DNA of 64,000 bases, from NCBI RefSeq assembly GCF_006345805.1, contig NC_043009.1:39990001-40054000 (forward strand), in the 5' to 3' direction. Both the position numbers and the translations under genes were made by a program. A model generated the notes under the pieces. That model ran no database searches, had not been told where the DNA came from, and was given only the letters and a program-made list of their open reading frames with translations. Below, one piece after another: positions 15,790 through 53,856 of the stretch (its first letter is position 1; the number at the start of each line of letters is the position of its first letter). This DNA comes from Octopus sinensis (lineage: Eukaryota).

Positions 15790-16170
15790 CACGCGTGGCT
15801 GTGTGGTAAGAAACTTCCTTCCTAACCACATAGATCTAGGTTTAGCCCCACTACGTGGCACTTTGGGTGAGTGCGAACCAAAGCGTTGTGAGTGGATTTG
15901 GCAGACGGAAACTTAAAGAAGCCCGTCGTATATATGTATGTGTGTGTGTGTGAGTGTATTTCTGTATATTTTTGTCCCTCACCACCGCTTGACAACCGAT
16001 GTTGGTGTGTTTACGTCCATGTAACTTCGACAATGATAAAATAAGTACTAGGCTTCAAAAAATAAGGCCCAATGTCGATTAGTTCGACTAAAAACGCTTC
16101 AAGTTGGTGCCCCAGCATGACCGCAGTCAAGTGATTGAAACAAGTAAAAAAAATAAAAGATAAATAATAA
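15790..16170 (+). mobile_element. SINE family II
   Basis: Head GTGGCTGTGTGGTAAG, internal (TG)n, tail GTGCCCCAGCATGACCGCAGTCAAGTGATTGAAACAAGTAAAA. Confidence 0.8.
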
Positions 16171-19831: not shown

Positions 19832-21732
<1,901 letters not shown>

Positions 21733-22249
21733 CACATATATATATATATATAATACATATATATATATATTATATATATATATATATATAATATATATAT
21801 ATATAATATATATATATAATATATATATATGTATATACTTATGTGTGTGTGTATATCTGCGTGTTTGTGGGTGTGTAGGTGGTTGTGTCTTTGTGTCTGA
21901 AGTTGTCTACCACCACCCCTTGATAAACAGTGTTGATTAGTTCATGTTACCGTAAACTAGCGGTTCGAAAAAAGAGACCGATAGAATAAGTACCAGCCTT
22001 AAAAAAGTAAATCCTGGGGTCGATTTCTTCGGCTAAAACCCTTCAAAGCAGAGTGCCCCAGCATGACCTCAGTCTAATGACTGAAAAAATTAAAGGATAA
22101 AAGATATCGACTCCAATGTTCACCTACTGATGCAATACTTCTCGATGCTGTATTTCTGATCCAATATAGTTTTTTTTTCTTTTTCTTTATTTTGGCTCTT
22201 ACAGCATAGATCCTCATCCAGGCGACCCGACTTAGCTTGGTCAAGCCTA

Positions 22250-25225: not shown

Positions 25226-25329
25226 ATATATATACATATATATGTATGTATGTATGTATGTATATATATGTATGTATGTATATATATATTATATATATAT
25301 ATGTATGTATGTATGTATGTATATATCAA

Positions 25330-25740
25330 CTGTTTCAGTGATTAGGCTGCAGCCATGTTGGTACACACTTTAAAGAACTTTTGACCAAATGAATTGACCG
25401 CAGTACTTGTTTCTTTTAAAACCGGATGCTTATTCTACTGTTTCTGTTGCCGAACCGCTAAGTTACAGGGATCTAAACACACCCACGCGAGTTGTCAAGC
25501 GGTAATGGGGGACAAACACAGATGCAAAGACACATAAGGATACACACACACACATACATACACACATATATACGTTGGGTTTCTTCCAGGCTCCGTCTCC
25601 CAAATCCACTCACAAGGCTTTAATGGTCCTGAGGATATAATATAAGATACTTGGTCAATATATCACGCAGTGGGTCTGAACCCGGAAGCAAGTAGTTGGA
25701 AAACAAGCTTTCTACCACACAGCCACGCCTGCGCCTATAC
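25330..25740 (-). mobile_element. SINE family II
   Basis: Reverse-complement homology to 34913-35317. Confidence 0.75.
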
Positions 25741-25831: not shown

Positions 25832-26438
25832 CATAAATAACTTTTGAAATAGTTTGATGAAATTTGTATTTAACAAGCAATTTCTAATATCACGACATTG
25901 TTAAATAAAATTTTATCAAATTTTTTCAAAAGTCATTTATGTCTTTATACACGCCTGATCTTTTTTTTACTTGTATTGTACAATGTATTCTATATGTTTT
26001 TGTACGATAATACATTAAGGAGCTTTTTTTTTACTAAGAGTACCACCGGATTACTTGAATCTATATATTGTGACTTACATATATACACATACGCACATAC
26101 ACACACGCTCACACTCACACACACAATTTCCGACGAAGGCTAAAAGGCGTAATATTCGAAATGAATGTCTCTCCTATTTTTATAACACCCCTCCCCACCA
26201 AAAAGCTACTTGATAATTCTTCAATTCAATATTAAATTGGTTTTATGTATGATACACTACTGTATTTATTCAATTAAAATATGAAACCTCTTTAAAGTGG
26301 TATCCCAGCATGACTGCAGTCCAATGGCTGAAGCAATTAAAAGATGAAAGGGGGGGAAAAAAGATACGCCTAAACATTTTATATGTTCAGCTACTACTAA
26401 ATTTTTAAAAAAAATAGGATCTGCACTACGCATCAAGT

Positions 26439-26789: not shown

Positions 26790-27256
26790 CTTTTATCTAT
26801 TGTTTCAGATTTTGGTGTGCGGCCATGCTGGGGCACCGCCACGAAGGAGTTTAGTCAAAGGAATCGACCACACTACCTAGCTCTTTAAAGCCTGGTACTG
26901 TCTATCATTTTGGCTGTACTTTTGTTACGCGGACGTAGCCATACCTACACTGGTTATCGAGCAATGTTTGAAGGTAAATGCAAACGCAAAGTCATACATT
27001 CGATAATATCCCAGAAACAGCTGTAAAACTTTGAATATTTCCAATAATAATAACGTATATAATTTGAGATGTTTGTCTTGCCTTAACGTTTGTTCTCCTT
27101 AACAATCATATATCCGCTATATCGAAAATCTACAATGGGTCCATAACTACCGTTTCGGCTATAAACTTGGAGCACTGGTAATATGTTACAACACTTACCT
27201 AGTGTACCTAGTCGTTTAGATCACCTGTGAACTAACCCCCATACTTTGTGTGTGTG

Positions 27257-34912: not shown

Positions 34913-35317
34913 GCAGGAGTGGCTGTGTGGTAAGTAGCTTGCTTACCAACCACATGGTTCCGGGTTCAGTCCCACTGCGTGGTACCTTGGGCAAGTGTCT
35001 TCTACTATAGCCTCGGGCCGACCAAAGCCTTGTGAGTGGATTTGGTAGACGGAAATGAAAGAAGCCCGTCGTATATATGTGTATATATATGTCCGTGTAT
35101 GTTTGTGTCTGTGTTTGTCTCCCTAGCATTGCTTCACAACCGATGCTGGTGTGTTTATGTCCTCGTCACTTTGCGGTTTGGCAAAAGAGACCGATAGAAT
35201 AAGTACTGGGCTTACAAAGAATAAGTCCCGGGGTCGAGTTGCTCGACTAAAGGCGGTGCTCCAGCATGGCCGCAGTCAAATGACTGAAACAAGTAAAAGA
35301 GTAAAAGAGAAAAGAGT
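34913..35317 (+). mobile_element. SINE family II, well-preserved reference copy
   Basis: GGAGTGGCTGTGTGGTAAG head, GGTTCAGTCCC B-box-like motif, internal TA/TG repeat, tail GGCGGTGCTCCAGCATGGCCGCAGTCAAATGACTGAAACAAGTAAAAGA. Confidence 0.9.
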
Positions 35318-37074
35318 AATATATAGTAATATTACATATTTGTGATACCGAAAATGACTAAACCGTTTAATATAATTTATACAGTTAGATTAAAGTTAAA
35401 TGCAGAATATTTATTTTCACACATAAACCATTGGAGTAGCTTATAACGAAAGATGTGTGACTAAATACTTTACTTTACTTAGTAACATTCTTTTACCTTC
35501 AGAATCAAAATTATGCTCCATCATCTAGAAAATAAGTACAAATCACAGAGTCGAGTCACTTTAAACGACTATAACATGCTCCTTAAAATAAGAAAAACTA
35601 TTGTCGTGTGTCCGTGTTAGGATTCATGAATTCTTCACTCATAAAAACTTCTTATCCATATACAGTAGTGAGATATTCTCTGAGAGCAGCTTTTGATTCG
35701 TTCTTCTACTTACTTCTCTGAAACATAATGTAATATCAAAGGAACTGCTAATAGCGATTCAGACAATAGACTGTATAAAGACTTACATTGGTAGCAGCCG
35801 ATAACGAAAAATGTTAAACGTTCAGCATGGTCGTCAAGCAAACAATGTGACGTATGTATCCGGGAAATGATTAGCTTCTGGAAAACAGGATTAGATAAAA
35901 TATGGAGAGATTACTTTAAAGTAATATCGATTGATATTGCATGGGCTTTCAAATAATTTGAAAAAGAGATAAGAAATGAGTAAATGAATGAGTGAATGAA
36001 TACATGAATGAAGAGAAGAATGAATATGAAAAATGCAAGACACAACGGGAACAAGAGAGGAGCAAAGAAAATTAGAAAAGATAAAGTAGTTTTATATTAG
36101 ATTACAAAATACAGTTACCTTTACGATCTCGGTACATTTCCATCGTAAAAGAACGAAATTAACTAACAGATTGAAGGCCTAAGATATTGTTATCACTTCT
36201 TCGATTTACTTTTGCTAAAAATAGTTTATGTAATTTTTCCTGTTGTTTTATATTCAAGCAAAGTTTTTAAACTTATCTATTTTCCGTTTCAACTTAAAGC
36301 GCACATCTCCAACTCATCTATAATTAAAATATCTTAATATTATTTTAAAATGCAGATGTTCCAATGGATTATTACTCGGTTCCGAGAATGTACCAAGTTT
36401 GTTTTTGATATTACAGGATATATGACAGACAATATTCTTATCAGCTTTTGGATGGAAAATATATATAAATATCTTAAAAACAATCAGGAAAAACATCCCT
36501 GAAAATAATAATCAGAATATCTATTTTAAAAATCTTCCCATCATATATTCTCTTGCATAGATTACATATGAGCTCACGGTTACGTTAGCATTTCAAGGTA
36601 TCATGGCAATGACAAATTATTGATAAATCCTCCAGGAATATTAAAAATGTCTCTTTCGTATTCATTGCGTGTTACGGATGAAACTAAATAATTACGTTCT
36701 TTACTTAGGATTCTTCAGGTTGTATACTAACATGAGATAAAACAATCAAATAAAAGTGCCTTTTATTCTAAAAGGGTTAGGTCATACTATTCTGAAAGTG
36801 AAAATATATCATTAATACTATATTGAGAGGAGTTACTGTGTCCATGTGAAACTGATCTGCTTAAGCAGATCAATTCCCTGCATGGTTATATGGTAAAGTG
36901 GTTCGCTTCCCCCACAACGACGATTCGAACTCAGACTCACTGTGTGGTGCCTTGCACCAACGTGTACCACTGTGGCCCTGCGGCGCTGACCATTACTGTT
37001 TGAAACAATTTTGGTGGACAGAAATTGTGGTGTAAGTCTGTCGTGTGTGTGTATGTGTGTGTGTATATATATAT

Positions 37075-37272
37075 ATTTCATCTTATTCATTTTATCTAGT
37101 TTCAGATCACGAGCCGTGGCCATGCTGCAGCACCGCCATTGAAACAATGTGCTATGCTTACTGCACCTAGGTTTCCAAGCGGTAACCCATCTAAGTACTG
37201 ACTAGGCTCGACGTTGCTTACCTTCGGTGATCAGACGAGAACCGGTGCTTTCAACGTGATATGGCCGTAAGC
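37075..37272 (-). mobile_element. 5S rRNA + CR1 3'-tail chimera (SINE3-like)
   Basis: The 5S head is followed after 15 nt by a 39/45 match to the LINE 3' end at 21556-21600. Confidence 0.75.
37156..37272 (-). pseudogene. Full-length 5S rRNA-derived sequence (117 nt) with no T-run terminator
   Basis: Minus strand reads GCTTACGGCCATATCACGTTGAAAGCACCGGTTCTCGTCTGATCACCGAAGGTAAGCAACGTCGAGCCTAGTCAGTACTTAGATGGGTTACCGCTTGGAAACCTAGGTGCAGTAAGC, a recognisable metazoan 5S with substitutions. Confidence 0.92.
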
Positions 37273-37394
37273 ATATAATATATATATATATACGTACGTA
37301 TGTATGTATGTATGTATGTATGTATGTATGTATGTATGTATGTATGTATGTATGCAAGTATGCATGTATGTATGTATATATGTATATTTGTATA

Positions 37395-37560
37395 TAGGAC
37401 TAGCTGTGTGTGGTACGTAGCTTGTTTACGAACCACATGGTTCCGGGTTCAGTCATGCTGCGTGACACCTTGTACAAGTATCTTCTATAGCCTAAGGCCG
37501 ACCAAAGCCTTGTGAGTGGATTTGGTAGACGAAAACTGAAAGAAGCCTGTGGTATATGTT
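37395..37560 (+). mobile_element. SINE family II head
   Basis: AACCACATGGTTCCGGGTTCAGTC...GTGAGTGGATTTGGTAGACGAAAACTGAAAGAAGCC. Confidence 0.8.
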
Positions 37561-41207: not shown

Positions 41208-42817
41208 TGTTTCTTTATTAGCCACACAGGGCTGCACACAGATAGAACAAATTACAAGGTAGAGCTTTTCTTTTGAAGGTTTAAAAAAAAAAAAAAAAAA
41301 AAAAAAAAGGAAGGGGGAGTTTCGATCAAAAGGGATCGTAAAAGGAGAGAAAGAGGACAAAAAAAGGGGGGGTTAAAAAAAAAAAAAAGGGGGGGAGAGG
41401 AAAAAAAAATTGATCAATAGGGATCGTTATCACAGAAATGTCAATATGAAGTGTAAAGGGGAGGACAGGTGAGGTTTACCCGTGGAAAAGAAAAGCCTAC
41501 GGAAAAGACCACGGTAACCTCGGTCAATGAAGTCACATTTTATATTTCTTTTTTTTTTTTTTTTTTTTGGCAAATAAGCAACTCTCTGTTTTCGATTTCT
41601 GGGTTCATAGGACTATGCTCAGGTGGCTTCGTCATTCATACGTGCCATTCTTGCTACATTCACCCATCTTTTTTTAAAACATTCGCTAGACAAAACTTGC
41701 CTCTCTACTCTCACTTTCCTTTTCAAGTGGTACTTGAAGAAGTTGATGAGAGATTGACCAGAGAGGAAAGTGTTTGTCTCCATCCTTTCAGACGCGTCCA
41801 CCAGATACATTCTTTCGCCATAGCCACAAGGATGATGAAAATAGCTCTTCCTTCCCGTTTGAAGGAAGGAGCCGTGACAATATTGACGATAGACTCAGCT
41901 GATAAACCGACTCGTCCCCACACGTGACAGCAGTTGTTCGACATAAGCCCACAGGTCGGAAATTGTTGGACACTGAACGAGTGCGTGCAGAACGGTTTCG
42001 TCGCTCTGACCGCATCTCGGGCAGGTCGGCCCCGTGTTTCTCTCGAGTCCGTGTCTGTAGAGCTTATCCCGAACGGGTAGCGCTTCTCGGTAGCACTGCC
42101 AGGCCAGGGATCTCTGGAAGTTGTCCATGGGCCCTGGCCCGAAAGTCGTCCCGAACAGGCGGGTCAGGTACTCCTCGTCGACGTCCAGGTTCGCCCCGAG
42201 CTCGTCGTCGTACCTCCCCTCCACTAAACCCCTATAGAATGCTTTGGTTGTGTTGAAGTCACTTAAGGTCGACCCAGGACGGCAGAGTTGCTTGAGAGCA
42301 ACGCGACACTCGCGGTGCCATTCGATTCCGCCCTTCCTCGCCTCTTTTTGATCCACGACTGCAGTTCGGTCATGGAGACGAGCTGCGGGAAAGCGTGCCT
42401 CACAAACGGCGACCACACCTGTTCACCGTCGTCTACATAGAGCCAGAGATGTCGCAGTCTCAGCGCGTGTCTGCGCATCATCAACCACGGCATGCCCAGC
42501 CCTCCTTTTACGGGTTTGACAGCAAATGGATCGCCTACCATCGGGACGCATCCTTTCCACAAGAAGCGAAAGAGGATGCGTTGTAGTTTGGTGATGGTAG
42601 GGTCGGGACAAGGTACGACCTGGTCAGGCGGTCAGTAATGACGGACGCGATGTACGTGTTCGCCACCTCCGCTCGACCTTTTAGGGACAGTTTCCTCTCG
42701 GCCCATTGCCGGGCGAGAGTGACCACCCGACTCGTTATCTCGTTCCAGTTCTTCTCCACTTGGAGGTCCGGACCAAACCAGACCCCGAGCAACTCAACCG
42801 GGCCATCGGTCCAGCGT
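41205..42817 (-). mobile_element. Tx1-clade LINE copy C, 5'-truncated
   Basis: Near-identical to B and F. Begins at WTDGPVELLGVWFG. ATAG repeats at both ends. Confidence 0.9.
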
Positions 42818-42883
42818 AGATAGATAGACGGACAGATAGGTATGCATACAGAAAAATTTAGACATACATATATATATATAAGA

Positions 42884-42921
<38 letters not shown>

Positions 42922-43220
42922 ATATATGTAAGCAACTATGCCTATGTCTGCACAAATGCACATATATATGTTTGAGCTTGTAAATACATATGCATATGTG
43001 CGCATATATGTGTATACGTATTTACATACATATAGCTTATATATTTATACACATCCTTTCATCCATTCATGAATGCACACATGAATACATATATACACGC
43101 GCAAACACACACACTTACACACACACACACTTATTCTCGCACACACATTGATACATACATAAAGACAGACAGACAAACAGACAAACAGACAGACAAACAG
43201 ACAGGCAGATAGATAGATGG

Positions 43221-46539: not shown

Positions 46540-46789
46540 TATATACTCTTTTACTTGTTTCAGTCAGTTGACTGTGGCGATGCTGGAGCACCGCCTTTTT
46601 TAGTCGAGCAAATCGACCCCAGGACTTATTCTTTGTAAGCTTAGTACTTGGATCTTTTCCCGGGCCGCTAAGTTACGGGACGTAAACACACAGCATCGGT
46701 TTAAGGTGAGCTGGGGGCCAAACATAGACACACAAACATATGCACACACATACTATATATATATATGTATATATAGATATATATATATA

Positions 46790-47320: not shown

Positions 47321-47464
47321 ATGCATCTAAAAAAAAACCGAATGAACAGCTTAATTCATCACTGTACCCGTGTATGTATTTTTATGCATGTATTTATAGA
47401 TATACTTTTGTATATATGTGTATGTAAGTATGTGCATATATATATGAGTGTGTGTGTATATATG

Positions 47465-47755
47465 TATGTATGTAGGTAGGTAGGTAGGTAGGTAGGTAGG
47501 TAGGTTAGTAGGTAGGTAGGTAGGTAGGTAGGTAGATAGATAGATAGGTAGGTAGGTAGGTAGGTAGGTAGGTAGGTAGGTAGGTAGGTAGGTAGGTTAG
47601 TAGGTAGGTAGGTAGGTAGGTAGGTAGATAGATAGATAGATAGGTAGGTAGGTAGGTAGGTAGGTAGGTAGGTAGGTAGGTAGATAGGTAGGTAGGTAGG
47701 TAGGTAGGTAGGTAGGTAGGTAGGTAGGTTAGTAGGTAGGTAGGTAGGTAGGTAG
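47465..47755. repeat. (GTAG)n/(ATAG)n compound microsatellite
   Basis: Direct reading. Confidence 0.95.
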
Positions 47756-48111
47756 ATATGTTTCTTTATTAGCCACACAGGGCTGCACACAGATAGAACA
47801 AATTACAAGGTAGAGATTTTCTTTTGAAGGTTTAAAAGAAAAAAAAAAAAAAAAAGGAGGGGGAGTTTCGATCAAAAGGGATCGTAAAAGGAGAGAAAGA
47901 GGACAAAAAGAAGGGGGGGTTAAAAAAAAAAAAAAAAGAAAGGGGGAGAGGGAAAAAAATTTGATCAATAGGGATCGTTATCACAGAAATGTCAATATGA
48001 AGTGTAAAGGGGAGGACAGGTGAGGTTTACCCGTGGAAAGAAAAGCCTACGGAAAAGACCACGGTAACCTCGGTCAATGAAGTCACATTTTATATTTCTT
48101 TTTTTTTTTTT

Positions 48112-48342: not shown

Positions 48343-51300
48343 AGGGGAGGTTCGATCAAAAGAGATCGTAAAAGGAGAGAAAGAGGACAAAAATAAGGGG
48401 GGTTAAAAAAAAAAAAAAAAAGGGGGGGGAGAGGAAAAAAAATGATCAATAGGGATCGTTATCACAGAAATGTCAATATGAAGTGTAAAGGGGAGGACAG
48501 GTGAGTTTAACCCGTGGAAAAAAAAAGCCTGCGGAAAAGACCACGGTAACCTCGGTCAATGAAGTCACATTTTATATTTCCTTTTTTTTTTTTTTTTTTT
48601 TTGCAAATAAGCAACTCTCTTTTTTCGATTTCTGGGTTCATAGGACTATGCTCAAGGTGGCTTCGTCATTCATACGTGCCATTCTTGCTACATTCACCCA
48701 TCTTTTTTTAAAACATTTGCTAGACAAAACTTGCCTCTCTACTCTCACTTTCCTTTTCAAGTGGTACTTGAAGAAGTTGATGAGAGATTGACCAGAGAGG
48801 AAGTGTTTGTCTCCAATCCTTTCAGACGCGTCCACCAGATACATTCTTTCGCCATAGCCACAAGATGATGAAAATAGCTCTTCCTTCCCGTTTGAAGGAA
48901 GGAGGCGTGACAATATTGACGATAGACTCAGCTGATAAACCGACTCGTCCCACACGTGACAGCAGTTGTTCGACATAAGCCCACAGGTCGGAAATTGTTG
49001 GACACTGAACGAGTGCGTGCAGAACGGTTTCGTCGCTCTGACCGCATCTCGGGCAGGTCGGCCCCGTGTTTCTCGAGCCGTGTCTGTAGAGCTTATCCCG
49101 AACGGGTAGCGCTTCTCGGTAGCACTGCCAGGCCAGGGATCTCTGGAAGTTGTCCATGGGCCCTGGCCCGAAAGTCGTCCCGAACAGGCGGGTCAGGTAC
49201 TCCTCGTCGACTCCAGGTTCGCCCCGAGCTCGTCGTCGTACCTCCCCTCCACTAAACCCCTATAGAATGCTTTGGTTGTGTTGAAGTCACTTAAGGTCGA
49301 CCCAGGACGGCAGAGTTGCTTGAGAGCAACGCGACACTCGCGGTGCCATTCGCCCTTCCTCGGCCTCTTTTTGATCCACGACTGCAGTTCGGTCATGGAG
49401 ACGAGCTGCGGGAAAGCGTGCCTCACAAACGGCGACCACACCTGTTCACCGTCGTCTACATAGAGCCAGAGATGTCGCAGTCTCAGCGCGTGTCTGCGCA
49501 TCATCAACCACGGCATGCCCAGCCCTCCTTTTAACGGGTGTTGACAGCAAATGGATCGCCTGACCATCGGGACGCATCCTTTCCACAAGAAGCGAAAGAG
49601 GATGCGTTGTATTTTGGTGATGGTAGGGTCGGGACAAGGTACGACGGTCAGGCGGTAGTAGATGACGGACGCGATGTACGTGTTCGCCACCTCCGCTCGC
49701 CTTTTTAGGGACAGTTTCCTCTCGGCCCATTGCCGGGCGAGAGTGACCACCCTACTCGTTATCTCGTTCCAGTTCTTCTCCACTTGGAGGTCCGACCAAA
49801 CCAGACCCCGAGCAACTCAACCGGGCCGTCGGTCCAGCGTCCCACGACGGAGGCGCTGGTGGACGGCATGGGCTTGCTTCTTCCCAGGTGCCTAGTCGCA
49901 AGCCCACTGACTTTTCCCGGTTGATTTTCGCTCCTGTCACCGCTTCGTAGTTTTTCAGTGTCTCGCCGACCAGCTCGATGTGCTCGTGGCTAGACACTAT
50001 GACGGTGACGCGTCGTCCGCGTATGCAGACACGCTCGTCCCGCATCCCAATTCTCGCGGGATGCCCCTTAGAGTCGCCAGCTTCCGCAGTAGTGGCTCAA
50101 GAGTCAATACGTATAGAAGCGCCGAGAGGGGGCATCCCTGACGGACCGAACGTGCAATGTCGAAAGGTCTCGATAGATGTCCATTTACGCGAATTACCGA
50201 ACGGATGCCTCTGTACAAGGCAGCTATCCAGCCGCGGAAGACGGGACCGAAACCAGCCGCTCTCAGGACTGCCTCCAAGTATCGATGGTCTACCCTATCA
50301 AAGGCTTTTGATTGATCCAAGTTGATCAGGGCCCCACCCATGCCTTTCTTGTCGAGAGTCGTGGTAGGCTATGTAGGTAGGCACTGAAGTCCACCCTACG
50401 TTCTTGCCCTCCACTCGTTCCGAACAGTCGGGCAAAATGCTGCTGAAAGGCCTCACACATTTTACTTGGCTCGAGCAATTCGCGCCCCTGTTCATCTACC
50501 AGGGACCGAATGGTGGCTTTGTTGCCCTGTTGCGCCTCTGCCACCCGGGCCTCTCTCGCGGCTCCAACACCTTCGTTCCTTAGAGCACGCATCCTTGCTC
50601 TGACAGCACATCCTTCGTGTTTGGCGTTGAAGTGTTTGGTCGGGGCCAACCTCGCCGCCAAAACGTCGGATGCGATGCCGCTTCTAATTGCCTCTTCTAG
50701 CTTCTTAACTAGCTCACCCTCTACTCTATTTCTATCTATGGCTAGTGCTTTGCTGTACCTAATCGCTTCTGCTTTTACTGCTCTCTTGAGGGCAAACCAC
50801 CATTTGTTGTTGATGATGGCTCCCGTCAAAGCCCTCTTTACTAGTGTGCTAATCCGGTCTCTGAAAACTTGTCTCGATGTGAAAGACGCGTTTAGTTTCC
50901 AGTATCCGGACCCTGCCTAAGTGTCTTACCTAAGTCTAGCGTACATGTCACAAGTTTGTGATCCGTGTAGCTGACTATGTGGAATTGTGGACATCCTATG
51001 CTATCTCTATCTACTGTCCTACACAGTATCCTATCTAGATACGATCTCGACGACCCGATGCGGTTGCTCCATGTCCACGTTGGCGCATTCGGGTGGTCTA
51101 GTCGAAACCTGTCAGACAGTTGAAAGCGTCTGAGCAGGTCTCTGAGGCATTTGCATCCCCGTCTATTCCTATCTCTACCCACGTAGTCTACATGCGTGTC
51201 CAAGGTAGCATTCCAATCCCCCACTAAGAGTAAGGACGAGACGTTCCCAAGAAAACTTCTAGACTTGAAAGAAATCCGCCCGACCTGTTAAGGGCGGTGC

Positions 51301-52000
51301 GTAAACTGATACGAGCCGAAAGCGCACCCATTGCTGCCGTCGACATCCAGGACGACCAGTCTACCCTCCGGGTCTACGAATATTGTCCTTACATTGAGAT
51401 CCAGCCTCTTGTGAAAATACCCGCGGTGCCACTACCGCCCATTCTCGGCAGACAGGGGGAAAAATAAATGTTGAACTGTCCGCCAAACATGGTCTTTAGG
51501 GCCCGCGGATTGTGGAGTCTGGTCTCGCTTATGGCTATGATTTCTAACTTATGTGACTTTATGTCATTTAAGAGGTACCCTTGTTTCCAAGGGGACCCCA
51601 AGCCACGCGCATTTACACAACCAATCTTGATCATAGTTCTAATGAATTAGAATACAGAGGGTTACTTACTGCTCTGCTCGAAAGTTTTTGCTTTCTCCTC
51701 CGTTGGTTGTCCTCGAGAAGATCCCAGTACAGTTTCTTTGTGAGATATTTTTGGCATTTACCAACCGCACTGGGGAAAATGCCTTTGAGTGTGTGGTGCA
51801 GACTTTTGGAGATGTGTATTATTTTGATGTGGTCTGGTGGTGTTGTGTATGGGTGGTTGTTTGTTTTTATGTCATCTTCTGTTATGTTTGTTTTTGATTG
51901 GATATATTCCATCAAATTTGTGTTTTTGGTGTCTATGGCTGTGAGCATGTTTGCTGTATATGTTTTTGTGGTGTTGGTGTGGCTGTTGTTTGCGTTGGGT
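48235..52000 (-). mobile_element. Tx1-clade LINE copy F: end of ORF1 + ORF2 + 3' UTR, with an internal deletion in RT
   Basis: APE motifs GCVNARGL, ISETRL, GDWNAT, SYLDRI and YTDHK; RT motifs LDQSKAFDRVDH, RQGCPLS and YADD; C-terminal CPRC/HALVQC. The SPGxDG and RPISL segments are absent between LPRLS and GMGGALINLD (~50345). Confidence 0.95.
48600..51634 (-). pseudogene. Tx1 ORF2 (AP endonuclease + RT + zf-RVT), frameshifted
   Basis: Assembled from minus-strand ORF-track fragments 51389-51634, 50892-51224, 50326-50829, 49997-50341, 49752-50045, 49193-49783 and 48822-49157. The end coordinate is approximate. Confidence 0.9.
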
Positions 52001-52625
52001 ATAGATAGATAGGTAGGTAGGTAGGTAGATAGGTAGGTAGTAGGTAGATAGGTAGGTAGGTAGGTAGGTAGGTAGGTAGGTAGGTTAGTAGGTAGGTAGG
52101 TGTAGGTAGGTAGGTAGGTAGGTAGGTAGTAGGTAGGTAGGTAGGTAGGTAGGTAGGTAGGTAGGTAGATAGATAGATAGGTAGTAGGTAGGTAGGTAGG
52201 TAGGTAGGTAGAGTAGGTAGGTAGGTAGGTAGGTAGTGGTAGGTAGGTAGGTAGTAGGTAGATAGATAGATAGGTAGGTAGGTAGGTAGGTAGGTAGGTA
52301 GATAGGTAGGTAGGTAGGTAGGTAGGTAGGTAGGTAGTAGGTAGATAGATAGATAGGTAGGTAGGTAGGTAGGTAGTAGGTAGGTAGGTAGGTAGGTAGG
52401 TAGTAGGTAGGTAGGTAGGTTGGTAGGTAGGTAGGTAGGTAGGTAGGTTAGTAGGTAGGTAGGTAGGTAGGTAGGTAGATAGATAGATAGATAGGTAGGT
52501 AGGTAGGTAGGTAGGTAGGTAGATAGGTAGGTAGGTAGGTAGGTAGGTAGGTAGGTAGGTAGGTAGGTAGATAGGTAGGTAGGTAGGTAGGTAGGTAGGT
52601 AGGTAGGTAGGTAGATAGGTAGGCA
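52001..52625. repeat. Long (GTAG)n/(ATAG)n array
   Basis: Direct reading. It explains the spurious 355-aa LPTY ORF. Confidence 0.95.
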
Positions 52626-52787
52626 GGTATAGATATATATGCATGTATTTGTTATACAGTTCTGGAAACTGTCCAGCCGTAGTCACAATTACTTTCAAGC
52701 ATGCTCAAGAGGTTAAGTAGCTCTTATAAGACATAGGTTGAAATCTTACCGCTTGCAGTCCTCAGAATACACACACGCACACACTCG

Positions 52788-52844
<57 letters not shown>

Positions 52845-53054
52845 ACACACACAACACACACGCACTCATCTACACACAAGTACATGCCCATATATATTTG
52901 TGTGTCTTTTGTAAGCCTGTAAGAGGTAAGATTTTAACCTATACGCACACACACGCACAAATTTATACGTATGTATATATGTTGTATGTATGTATGTATA
53001 TATATAAATGTGTGTGTGTGTGTGTATTTGTACACTATAATTTAAACTGAACGT

Positions 53055-53280
53055 GCGCAATGGCCTAGTGGTTAGGGCAGCGGACTCGCGGTCGCAGGAT
53101 CGCGGTTTCGATTCTCAGACTGAGCGTTGTGTGTGTTTATTGAGCGAAAACACCTAAAAGCTCTACGAGGCTCCGGCAGGGGGTGGTGATCCCTGCTGTA
53201 CTCTTTCACCACAATGGCGGTGCCCCAGCATGGCCACAGCTCAAGAGCTGAAACTGCAAAAACAAAAACAAAACAAAAGC
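53055..53280 (+). mobile_element. tRNA-derived SINE family I head joined to the CR1 3' tail
   Basis: A and B boxes present. The body matches 60545-60927 up to CTCTTTCACCACAA, then 41/45 identity to 21556-21600. Confidence 0.85.
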
Positions 53281-53440: not shown

Positions 53441-53856
53441 GGTGTAGGAGTGGTTGTGTGAAAAGAAGCTTGCTTACCAACCACATGGTTCCGGATTCAG
53501 TCCCACTGGCACCTTGGGCAAGTGCCTTCTACTATAGCCTCGAGCCGACCAAAGCCTTGTGAGTGGATTTGGTAGACGGAAACTGAAAGAAGCCCGTCGT
53601 ATACATGTGTATTTATATATATATATATATGTGTGTATGTGTTGTGTGTGTGTGTGTGTGTGTATGTGTGTTGTGTGTGTGTGTTTTTCTCCCCAACATC
53701 GCTTGACAACCTGTGCTGGTGTGTTTACGTCCCCGTAACTTAGCTGTTCGGCAATAGAGTCCGATAGAATAAGTACTAGGTTTACAAAGAATAAGTCCTG
53801 GGGTCGTAGCATGGCCGCAGTCAAATGACTAAAACAAGTAAAAGAGTAAAAAAGAG
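53441..53856 (+). mobile_element. SINE family II
   Basis: Colinear with 34913-35317. Confidence 0.85.

What the first reader, a model, noticed from the sequence alone, without database searches (positions are those of the whole stretch)
37075..37272. 5S rRNA fused to a LINE 3' tail: candidate new SINE3 family or template-switch chimera
A complete 117-nt 5S copy with internal Pol III promoter regions and no T-run terminator is followed after 15 nt by AATGGCGGTGCTGCAGCATGGCCACGGCTCGTGATCTGAAACTAG, which is 39/45 identical to the CR1 end at 21556-21600. 5S-head plus CR1-tail SINE3s are established in zebrafish. I do not know of one described from cephalopods but cannot check. A second Pol III head joined to the same tail at 53055 suggests this RT readily captures Pol III RNAs.
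Basis: partly seen in the sequence, partly recalled or inferred. Interest (0 to 1): 0.7.

Follow-up and report, generated by a model that had tools for sequence, protein, structure and literature searches.

The report
Octopod 5S-headed SINE with LINE tail
This is a roughly 200-base retroposed element, a full 5S ribosomal RNA copy joined to the 3' end of a LINE from the same octopod genome; it is most likely an ordinary copy of a 5S-derived SINE, a repeat class already listed in octopus repeat annotation.

Summary
On the minus strand, 37272-37155 is a full-length 5S rRNA copy (Rfam 101.6 bits). It has no T-run terminator. A 14-nt linker follows, then a 45-nt module at 37140-37096 that is 39/45 identical to the 3' end of a 5'-truncated LINE at 21556-21600, then a 9-nt tandem repeat.

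The module is the conserved 3' UTR of an octopod LINE clade. It also follows the RT ORF in Argonauta hians and in a metagenome scaffold. It folds into two hairpins with compensatory changes. It ends 11 elements in this window, but only this one has a 5S head.

The single question that matters is whether the junction is multi-copy, and I could not test it: no cephalopod genome was reachable by DNA search. Published data favour a family. The Octopus vulgaris annotation lists four '5S' SINE families covering 9.83 Mb, which predicts about one copy per 64 kb. The giant squid has about 24,000 5S-derived loci.

Verdict: probably (about 0.7) a copy of a SINE3-type family. A one-off template-switch chimera stays open at about 0.22. 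The kind is known and the interest is low to moderate. The 'CR1' label and the tRNA nature of the head at 53055 are not verified.

The parts
37155..37272 (-). 5S rRNA-derived head. It is full length, starts at 5S position 1, has 4 non-standard pairs and two 1-nt deletions relative to the model, and is followed by no T-run.
   Evidence: Rfam RF00001, 101.6 bits, E = 4.4e-21, model 1-120. It matches the Rfam consensus at 76/120 positions. It is unique in the window.
37141..37154 (-). 14-nt linker TAGCACATTGTTTC of unresolved origin. It shares TAGCA..CA with the LINE 3' UTR just upstream of the tail (GTAGCAACACC in the window LINE, GTAGCAGCAAC in L027). This is a weak lead only.
   Evidence: Sequence reading and MAFFT alignment.
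37096..37140 (-). LINE-derived 3' tail module with two hairpins. In this copy hairpin 2 has one G-U pair and one broken pair.
   Evidence: 39/45 identical to 21556-21600. Covariance model R1 scores it 59.1 bits.
37077..37095 (-). 3' terminal short tandem repeat: a 9-nt unit (TAAGATGAA on the element strand) in 2.1 copies.
   Evidence: TRF.
37064..37076 (.). 3'-flanking (TA)n. This is one half of a 13-nt direct repeat, ATATATATATATA, that flanks the whole composite. It is a possible target-site duplication but cannot be told apart from microsatellite.
37279..37291 (.). 5'-flanking (TA)n, the other half of the 13-nt repeat. It lies 6 nt from the 5S start.
19955..21600 (+). 5'-truncated LINE that carries the closest tail. 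An RVT_1 reverse transcriptase ORF spans 20312-21532, followed by a 23-nt spacer and the tail at 21556-21600. (AATC)n follows from 21601.
   Evidence: Pfam RVT_1, 68 bits. Sequence. Relatives P0001 (75% identity) and P0002, Argonauta hians (63%).
53055..53259 (+). A different SINE with the same tail (41/45 identical to the LINE tail). Its head is tRNA-like by A/B box motifs only. (CAAAA)n follows.
   Evidence: No tRNA call.
34919..35295 (+). A copy of the abundant long SINE family that ends in a variant of the same tail module. Further copies have tails at 16100, 22051, 25372(-), 46598(-) and 53810. Tails at 26843(-) and 26293 also match the module but were not assigned to this family with confidence.

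Best explanation
The element is a retroposed copy of a 5S rRNA-derived SINE (SINE3 type) with a 'simple' architecture: 5S head, short linker and LINE tail, with no body.

Proposed mechanism:
1. RNA polymerase III starts at 5S position +1, using the internal 5S promoter (box A, IE, box C).
2. Because the T-run terminator is missing, it reads through the linker and the LINE-derived tail.
3. The reverse transcriptase of the partner LINE recognises the two-hairpin 3' module plus the terminal short repeat.
4. It copies the RNA into an AT-rich target by target-primed reverse transcription.
5. The founder arose when the LINE's RT switched template from the LINE 3' UTR to a 5S rRNA.

Shown here: the 5S head, the missing terminator, tail homology to a LINE in the same window, conservation of the tail behind LINE ORFs in other octopods, covariation in the tail hairpins, and re-use of the tail by other SINEs.

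Inferred, not shown: Pol III transcription, recognition by the LINE RT, and above all that this junction is multi-copy in the genome.
For: The 5S head is full length and starts exactly at position 1. There is no T-run of 4 or more for about 350 nt after the 5S end.

The tail is 39/45 identical to the LINE end at 21556. The same module lies 7-25 nt behind the RT ORF stop in L027 and in Argonauta hians L028, and is followed by short tandem repeats. Two hairpins are predicted: 95.2% of cells are paired, 3 pairs show changes on both sides, and slid controls give 19-43%.

Eleven tail-bearing elements lie in the 64 kb, with at least three different 5' parts. So this LINE's tail demonstrably mobilises non-autonomous elements here.

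Only one repeat pair, 13 nt of (TA)n, flanks the whole composite, and none flanks either part alone.

Literature: the O. vulgaris annotation lists SINE '5S' as 4 families covering 9,831,953 bp. That is 0.35% of the genome, or about 225 bp expected per 64 kb, which is the one copy seen. CR1 LINEs are recently active in O. vulgaris. Architeuthis has about 24,000 5S-derived loci. SINE3 families have arisen independently many times.
Against: Only one copy was seen, and no second copy with the same junction was found anywhere. There is none elsewhere in the window, none in 21 kb of Argonauta, and none in metagenome, viral or prokaryote collections or in the protein database. None of those resources holds cephalopod genomes, so the negatives carry almost no weight.

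I could not check that the published '5S' SINE families have this architecture. Part of that 9.8 Mb may be true 5S rDNA: its one 'recently active' family averages about 6 kb per insertion.

The source species of the window is not identified. The TSD is uninformative because it lies in microsatellite. The 3' repeat unit (9-mer) differs from the (AATC)n of the LINE copy at 21556, so that copy is not the direct partner.
Confidence: 0.7

Rival explanations
1. A one-off (or very low-copy) template-switch chimera. During target-primed reverse transcription of a LINE RNA, the RT copied about 59 nt of the 3' end, then jumped to a cellular 5S rRNA and copied it to its 5' end. The result is a dead 5S retropseudogene fused to a LINE tail that never amplified.
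For: The structure is exactly what such an event yields: the small RNA at the 5' end, the LINE 3' end in the same orientation, and one candidate repeat pair around the whole. The 5S is complete at both ends, as expected when mature 5S rRNA is the template. Only one copy was seen. The linker may be LINE 3' UTR sequence. Chimeric retrogenes of small RNAs with LINE 3' parts are known in human (cited in PMC4758252).
Against: Such chimeras are rare per genome, so meeting one in a random 64 kb is unlikely. A 5S SINE class at the published 0.35% of the genome predicts about one copy per window. In addition, a mature 5S rRNA template would normally carry 3' U residues, and none is present at the junction.
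Confidence: 0.22
2. Chance adjacency of two independent insertions: a 5S pseudogene or orphan 5S gene, and a severely 5'-truncated LINE or SINE tail that landed next to it.
For: The region is saturated with retroposons and microsatellites, so nested insertions do happen here. LINE insertions are often 5'-truncated.
Against: The two parts have the same orientation and only 14 nt between them. No direct repeat of 5 nt or more flanks the 5S alone, and only a 5-nt chance match flanks the tail alone. A tail-less 5S retropseudogene would itself need explaining for a LINE that relies on a specific 3' module.
Confidence: 0.05
3. A functional, dispersed 5S rRNA gene whose downstream region happens to contain a LINE fragment.
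For: The Rfam score is high, the match is full length, and the promoter regions are in place.
Against: No terminator T-run is present for about 350 nt. Four helix positions are non-standard pairs, and there are two deletions relative to the model. It is solitary, with no tandem array in 64 kb. It is embedded in microsatellite between SINE copies.
Confidence: 0.02

Closest known systems
SINE3 of zebrafish (Kapitonov & Jurka 2003, Mol Biol Evol 20:694; cited; details from my own knowledge)
   Same: A 5S rRNA-derived head with an internal Pol III promoter, joined to a 3' tail shared with a CR1-like LINE of the same genome.
   Different: Zebrafish SINE3 has a long body between head and tail. Here only 14 nt separate a complete 5S from the tail (a 'simple' SINE). 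The host is an octopod mollusc. Multi-copy status is not shown here.
'5S' SINE class in the Octopus vulgaris repeat annotation (Bonar et al. 2026, PMC13282606, supplementary Table 1)
   Same: An octopus genome and a SINE classed as 5S-derived. Its genome share (0.35%) predicts the one copy per 64 kb seen here.
   Different: Only counts are published in the text I could read.
Ante, a scaphopod SINE with a 5S head (Luchetti & Mantovani 2016, PMC5804259)
   Same: A mollusc SINE with a 5S-derived head.
   Different: Ante is 388 bp and carries CORE and V domains in its body. The present element has no body.
UnaL2/UnaSINE1 of eel (Kajikawa & Okada 2002, Cell 111:433; cited; details from my own knowledge)
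   Same: LINE and SINE share a conserved 3' stem-loop followed by a short tandem repeat, which the LINE RT must recognise ('stringent' type).
   Different: UnaSINE1 has a tRNA head, and recognition was shown by experiment. Here it is inferred from conservation and covariation only.
Chimeric retrogenes made by LINE template switching (Buzdin et al. 2003; cited in PMC4758252)
   Same: A small Pol III RNA copy fused 5' to a LINE 3' part in the same orientation.
   Different: Those are single, non-amplifying events made by L1 with poly(A) ends. Here the tail is a structured non-poly(A) module that many SINEs in the same window use.

Membership tests
SINE (SINEBase criteria, PMC3531059) / SINE3 | A short (<1 kb), interspersed, non-tandem repeat | tested here: met
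   About 196 nt (37077-37272). It is solitary, with no second 5S in the 64 kb.
SINE (SINEBase criteria) / SINE3 | At least 60% identity with 5S rRNA over at least 60 nt | tested here: met
   Full-length Rfam 5S match at 101.6 bits. It is identical to the Rfam consensus at 76/120 positions. The species' own 5S was not available.
SINE (SINEBase criteria) / SINE3 | [quoted passage not shown] | not testable with these tools
   No cephalopod genome is searchable by DNA, and the protein-space trick found nothing. Literature only: 9.83 Mb of '5S' SINE in O. vulgaris.
SINE (SINEBase criteria) / SINE3 | A 3' tail homologous to the tail of a LINE in the same genome | tested here: met
   39/45 identical to the LINE end at 21556-21600. 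The same module follows RT ORFs in L027 and L028.
SINE (SINEBase criteria) / SINE3 | Transcription by Pol III from the internal promoter | not testable with these tools
   The box A, IE and box C regions are aligned without indels. No expression data are available.
SINE (SINEBase criteria) / SINE3 | Diagnostic differences from the cellular 5S gene shared among copies (this separates a simple SINE from an RNA pseudogene) | not testable with these tools
   Neither other copies nor the species' 5S gene were available.
Retroposed insertion (any LINE-dependent element) | Target-site duplication flanking the whole element | tested here: inconclusive
   13 nt of ATATATATATATA lie on both sides (37279-37291 and 37064-37076), but both lie in (TA)n microsatellite.
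CR1-clade LINE (as the partner) | An RT ORF followed by a short 3' UTR with a hairpin and a short tandem repeat instead of poly(A) | tested here: met
   RVT_1 ORF at 20312-21532. Two hairpins show covariation. (AATC)n follows the window LINE tail; different short tandem repeats follow the tails in L027 and L028.
CR1-clade LINE (as the partner) | Phylogenetic placement of the RT inside the CR1 clade | not tested
   No reference LINE library was on hand. The named relatives carry only the automatic 'jockey' name.
Functional 5S rRNA gene | A Pol III terminator (T-run) directly after the 3' end | tested here: not met
   The first run of 4 or more T is at element position 469.
Template-switch chimeric retrogene (one-off) | A junction unique in the genome | not testable with these tools
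   The same limitation as for copy number.

The most novel reading that the evidence does not exclude
This would be the first characterised cephalopod SINE3: a minimal 'simple' 5S SINE in which a complete 5S is joined almost directly to a two-hairpin LINE 3' module. The same module has been captured by at least three different 5' heads in one genome, which would make octopods a natural system for watching a single LINE clade create SINEs repeatedly from different Pol III RNAs.
Probability: 0.4. Interest if true: 0.4.

Novelty: new member of a known kind. Interest (0 to 1): 0.25.

Why it matters
If the junction is multi-copy, it documents the structure and LINE partner of a 5S-derived SINE in cephalopods. 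So far that lineage has such elements only as numbers in annotation tables. Octopus genomes are unusually SINE-rich, and repeated capture of one LINE tail by different Pol III heads bears on how those expansions began. It does not change the understanding of SINE biology: 5S-head plus LINE-tail elements are an established kind that has arisen many times.

Tried and rejected
1. Six-frame peptides. I searched all six reading frames of the element as pseudo-peptides against 5.8 billion proteins, hoping for spurious ORFs called over other copies. There were 0 hits at E<=0.01.
2. Metagenome scans. The junction pattern gave 0 hits. The tail-only pattern gave 26 hits, all GC-rich bacterial chance matches lacking the hairpin-2/CTGAAAC context.
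3. Viral and prokaryote genome scans with the tail-plus-CTGAAAC pattern gave 0 hits.
4. Harvesting octopod DNA through LINE proteins. Only one Argonauta locus (21 kb) and one 2-kb metagenome scaffold were reachable. A second search seeded with the Argonauta protein gave no further octopod paralogs. Neither locus holds a 5S.
5. Full-text search for the sequences themselves in papers gave 0 hits.
6. The Walker & Doolittle 1983 5S paper and Albertin 2015 are not held. So I made no comparison with a genuine cephalopod 5S, and I did not estimate age from differences to the Rfam consensus. From memory, several apparent 'mutations' (TTAGATGGG, CCGCTTGG) are normal variants in Drosophila 5S.
7. The MFE fold of the whole element is uninformative (z = -1.23).
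8. Rfam at a permissive threshold on the two tRNA-like heads gave only microsatellite-driven miRNA false positives.
9. I did not run the one search of protein representatives. It draws on the same protein set as and its hits cannot be traced to DNA.

Full report
**What is there.** Every feature of the finding lies on the minus strand. Rfam's 5S model matches 37272..37155 over its full length (model positions 1-120, 118 nt) at 101.6 bits against a gathering score of 38, E = 4.4e-21. It is the only Rfam family hit in the 64 kb. The copy starts exactly at 5S position 1. It has four non-standard pairs in the helices and two one-base deletions relative to the model. It matches the Rfam consensus at 76 of 120 positions.

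Directly after the 5S comes TAGCACATTGTTTC (14 nt). Next is AATGGCGGTGCTGCAGCATGGCCACGGCTCGTGATCTGAAACTAG (37140..37096). Then comes a 9-nt unit repeated 2.1 times (37095..37077), then (TA)n and (CA)n. On the element strand there is no run of four or more T until position 469, about 350 nt past the 5S end.

**The tail.** The 45-nt module is 39/45 identical to 21556-21600. That stretch lies 23 nt behind the stop codon of a 406-aa ORF (20312-21532) with a Pfam RVT_1 domain. An upstream ORF fragment continues the RT, so this is a 5'-truncated LINE. Its tail is followed by (AATC)n.

The closest proteins in the 5.8-billion-protein collection are P0001 (75% identity, a 2-kb ENA metagenome scaffold) and P0002 (63%, Argonauta hians). 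All other listed hits are at or below about 51%. The window therefore comes from an octopod.

I fetched the DNA of both relatives. In both, the same module lies 7-25 nt behind the ORF stop and is followed by a short tandem repeat. The module is thus the conserved 3' UTR of an octopod LINE clade.

RNAalifold on eight tails predicts two hairpins. On that structure 95.2% of cells are standard pairs, and three pairs change on both sides while staying paired. One of these is a C-G to U-A change in Argonauta in hairpin 1; the other two are in hairpin 2. Sliding the 3' partners by 1-3 columns drops pairing to 19-43% with almost no double changes. This is the signature of a structured 3' end that the LINE's own RT recognises, as shown experimentally for eel UnaL2 (my knowledge). 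In the 5S element, hairpin 2 carries one G-U pair and one broken pair, so this individual copy is slightly decayed.

**How widely the tail is used.** A covariance model of the tail finds 11 tail-bearing elements in the window:
- the LINE at 21556;
- the 5S element;
- an element at 53055-53259 with a different head;
- eight others, most of them copies of one long SINE family with an internal (TG/TA)n microsatellite.

None of the others has 5S sequence upstream. The head at 53055 has an exact A box and a near B box, but neither ARAGORN nor Rfam at E<=1 calls it a tRNA. 'A second Pol III head' is therefore plausible but not verified.

**One event or two.** The only direct repeat around the element is 13 nt of ATATATATATATA, at 37279-37291 and 37064-37076. 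It flanks the whole composite but sits in microsatellite, so it cannot count as a proven target-site duplication. No repeat of 5 nt or more flanks the 5S alone, and only a 5-nt chance match flanks the tail alone. The two parts share orientation and are 14 nt apart.

A functional 5S gene is also unlikely: there is no terminator, no array, there are mispaired helices, and the copy is embedded between SINE copies in microsatellite.

**Family or one-off.** This is the decisive question, and I could not answer it directly. None of the DNA collections at hand contains cephalopod genomes:
- the junction pattern and the tail pattern gave nothing relevant in metagenome, viral or prokaryote collections;
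- a six-frame peptide search for spurious ORFs over other copies gave nothing;
- only 23 kb of other octopod DNA could be fetched, and it holds no 5S.

These negatives say almost nothing about copy number.

The literature is more informative. A curated repeat annotation of Octopus vulgaris lists a SINE class '5S' with four consensus families covering 9,831,953 bp (PMC13282606, supplementary Table 1). That is 0.35% of the genome, or about 225 bp per 64 kb, which is one copy of this size. The same paper lists CR1 LINEs among the recently active families. The giant squid genome paper reports about 24,000 loci derived from 5S rRNA and suggests that many are SINEs (PMC6962438). A scaphopod SINE with a 5S head is described (PMC5804259), and SINE3 families are stated to have arisen independently many times (PMC10886601).

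A caveat applies. Part of the '5S' coverage in O. vulgaris may be true 5S rDNA, because its single 'recently active' family averages about 6 kb per insertion. I also could not see the consensus sequences.

One-off chimeras are rare per genome, whereas a 0.35% repeat class is expected about once per window. I therefore put about 0.7 on a copy of a 5S-derived SINE family and about 0.22 on a one-off or low-copy template-switch chimera. Both share the same origin mechanism (the RT switching from the LINE 3' UTR to a 5S RNA) and differ only in whether the product amplified.

**Mechanism.** Inferred from established SINE/LINE biology: Pol III initiates at +1 from the internal 5S promoter. It reads through because the terminator is absent and transcribes the tail. 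The LINE RT binds the two-hairpin module and terminal repeat, then inserts a cDNA by target-primed reverse transcription.

The 3' repeat unit differs among the elements: a 9-mer here, (AATC)n on the LINE copy at 21556, (CAAAA)n at 53213 and (GTAAAAGA)n at 35249. So the LINE copy in the window is a relative of the partner, not the partner itself. The linker shares TAGCA..CA with the LINE 3' UTR just upstream of the tail in two LINE copies. That would mean the 5S abuts LINE sequence directly, but the match is too short to count as evidence.

**Comparison and novelty.** The kind (SINE3: a 5S head plus the tail of a CR1-like LINE) has been known since 2003. A 2024 review lists 5S-derived SINEs only from reptiles, insects, fish and mammals (PMC10946416). 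Cephalopod examples exist only as counts in two genome papers, so a description of structure and partner would be a modest addition.

What differs from zebrafish SINE3 is the minimal architecture with no body. The 'CR1' assignment of the LINE was not tested. It rests on the hairpin-plus-microsatellite 3' end and on automatically named 'jockey' relatives. I file the element as a probable new (or so far undescribed) member of a known kind, with low to moderate interest.

Noticed in passing
window 16100-16146(+), 22051-22092(+), 25327-25372(-), 34919-35295(+), 46552-46598(-), 53810-53840(+); possibly also 26797-26843(-) and 26293-26339(+): Several copies of one long SINE family end in a variant of the same LINE tail. 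The family carries an internal (TG/TA)n microsatellite, so many of the window's microsatellites sit inside SINE copies. Its head gives no tRNA hit in Rfam or ARAGORN.
   Followed up: partly
window 36870-37045(+) and 37400-37500(+): The 5S element lies between two 5' halves of tRNA-type SINE copies that have no detectable tail nearby, inside (TG)n(TA)n...(TATG)n repeats. It may have inserted into the internal microsatellite of such a SINE. I did not resolve this.
   Followed up: no
window 48800-51300(-) and 41900-43000(-): A second, unrelated LINE lies here. It has Exo_endo_phos, RVT_1 and zf-RVT domains and is broken into several ORFs. A second fragment shares near-identical peptides. It looks L1/Tx1-like and is not the hairpin-tailed LINE.
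   Followed up: partly
L027 (ENA ERZ23491053 scaffold_88453) 378-1763: A metagenome assembly holds an octopod-type LINE (75% aa identity to the window's) with the same tail and a (GTAAAAGA)-type repeat. So this sample contains octopod host DNA.
   Followed up: no
window 47359-47790(-), 51631-52698(-): Long open frames made of (TACC/TTAC...)-type short repeats translate as YLPT repeats. These are mechanical ORFs over microsatellite, not genes.
   Followed up: no
window 52950-53045: Rfam at a permissive threshold gives several miRNA 'hits' (mir-297, mir-3149 and others), all far below gathering score and all on (TA/TG)n repeats. They are false positives.
   Followed up: yes
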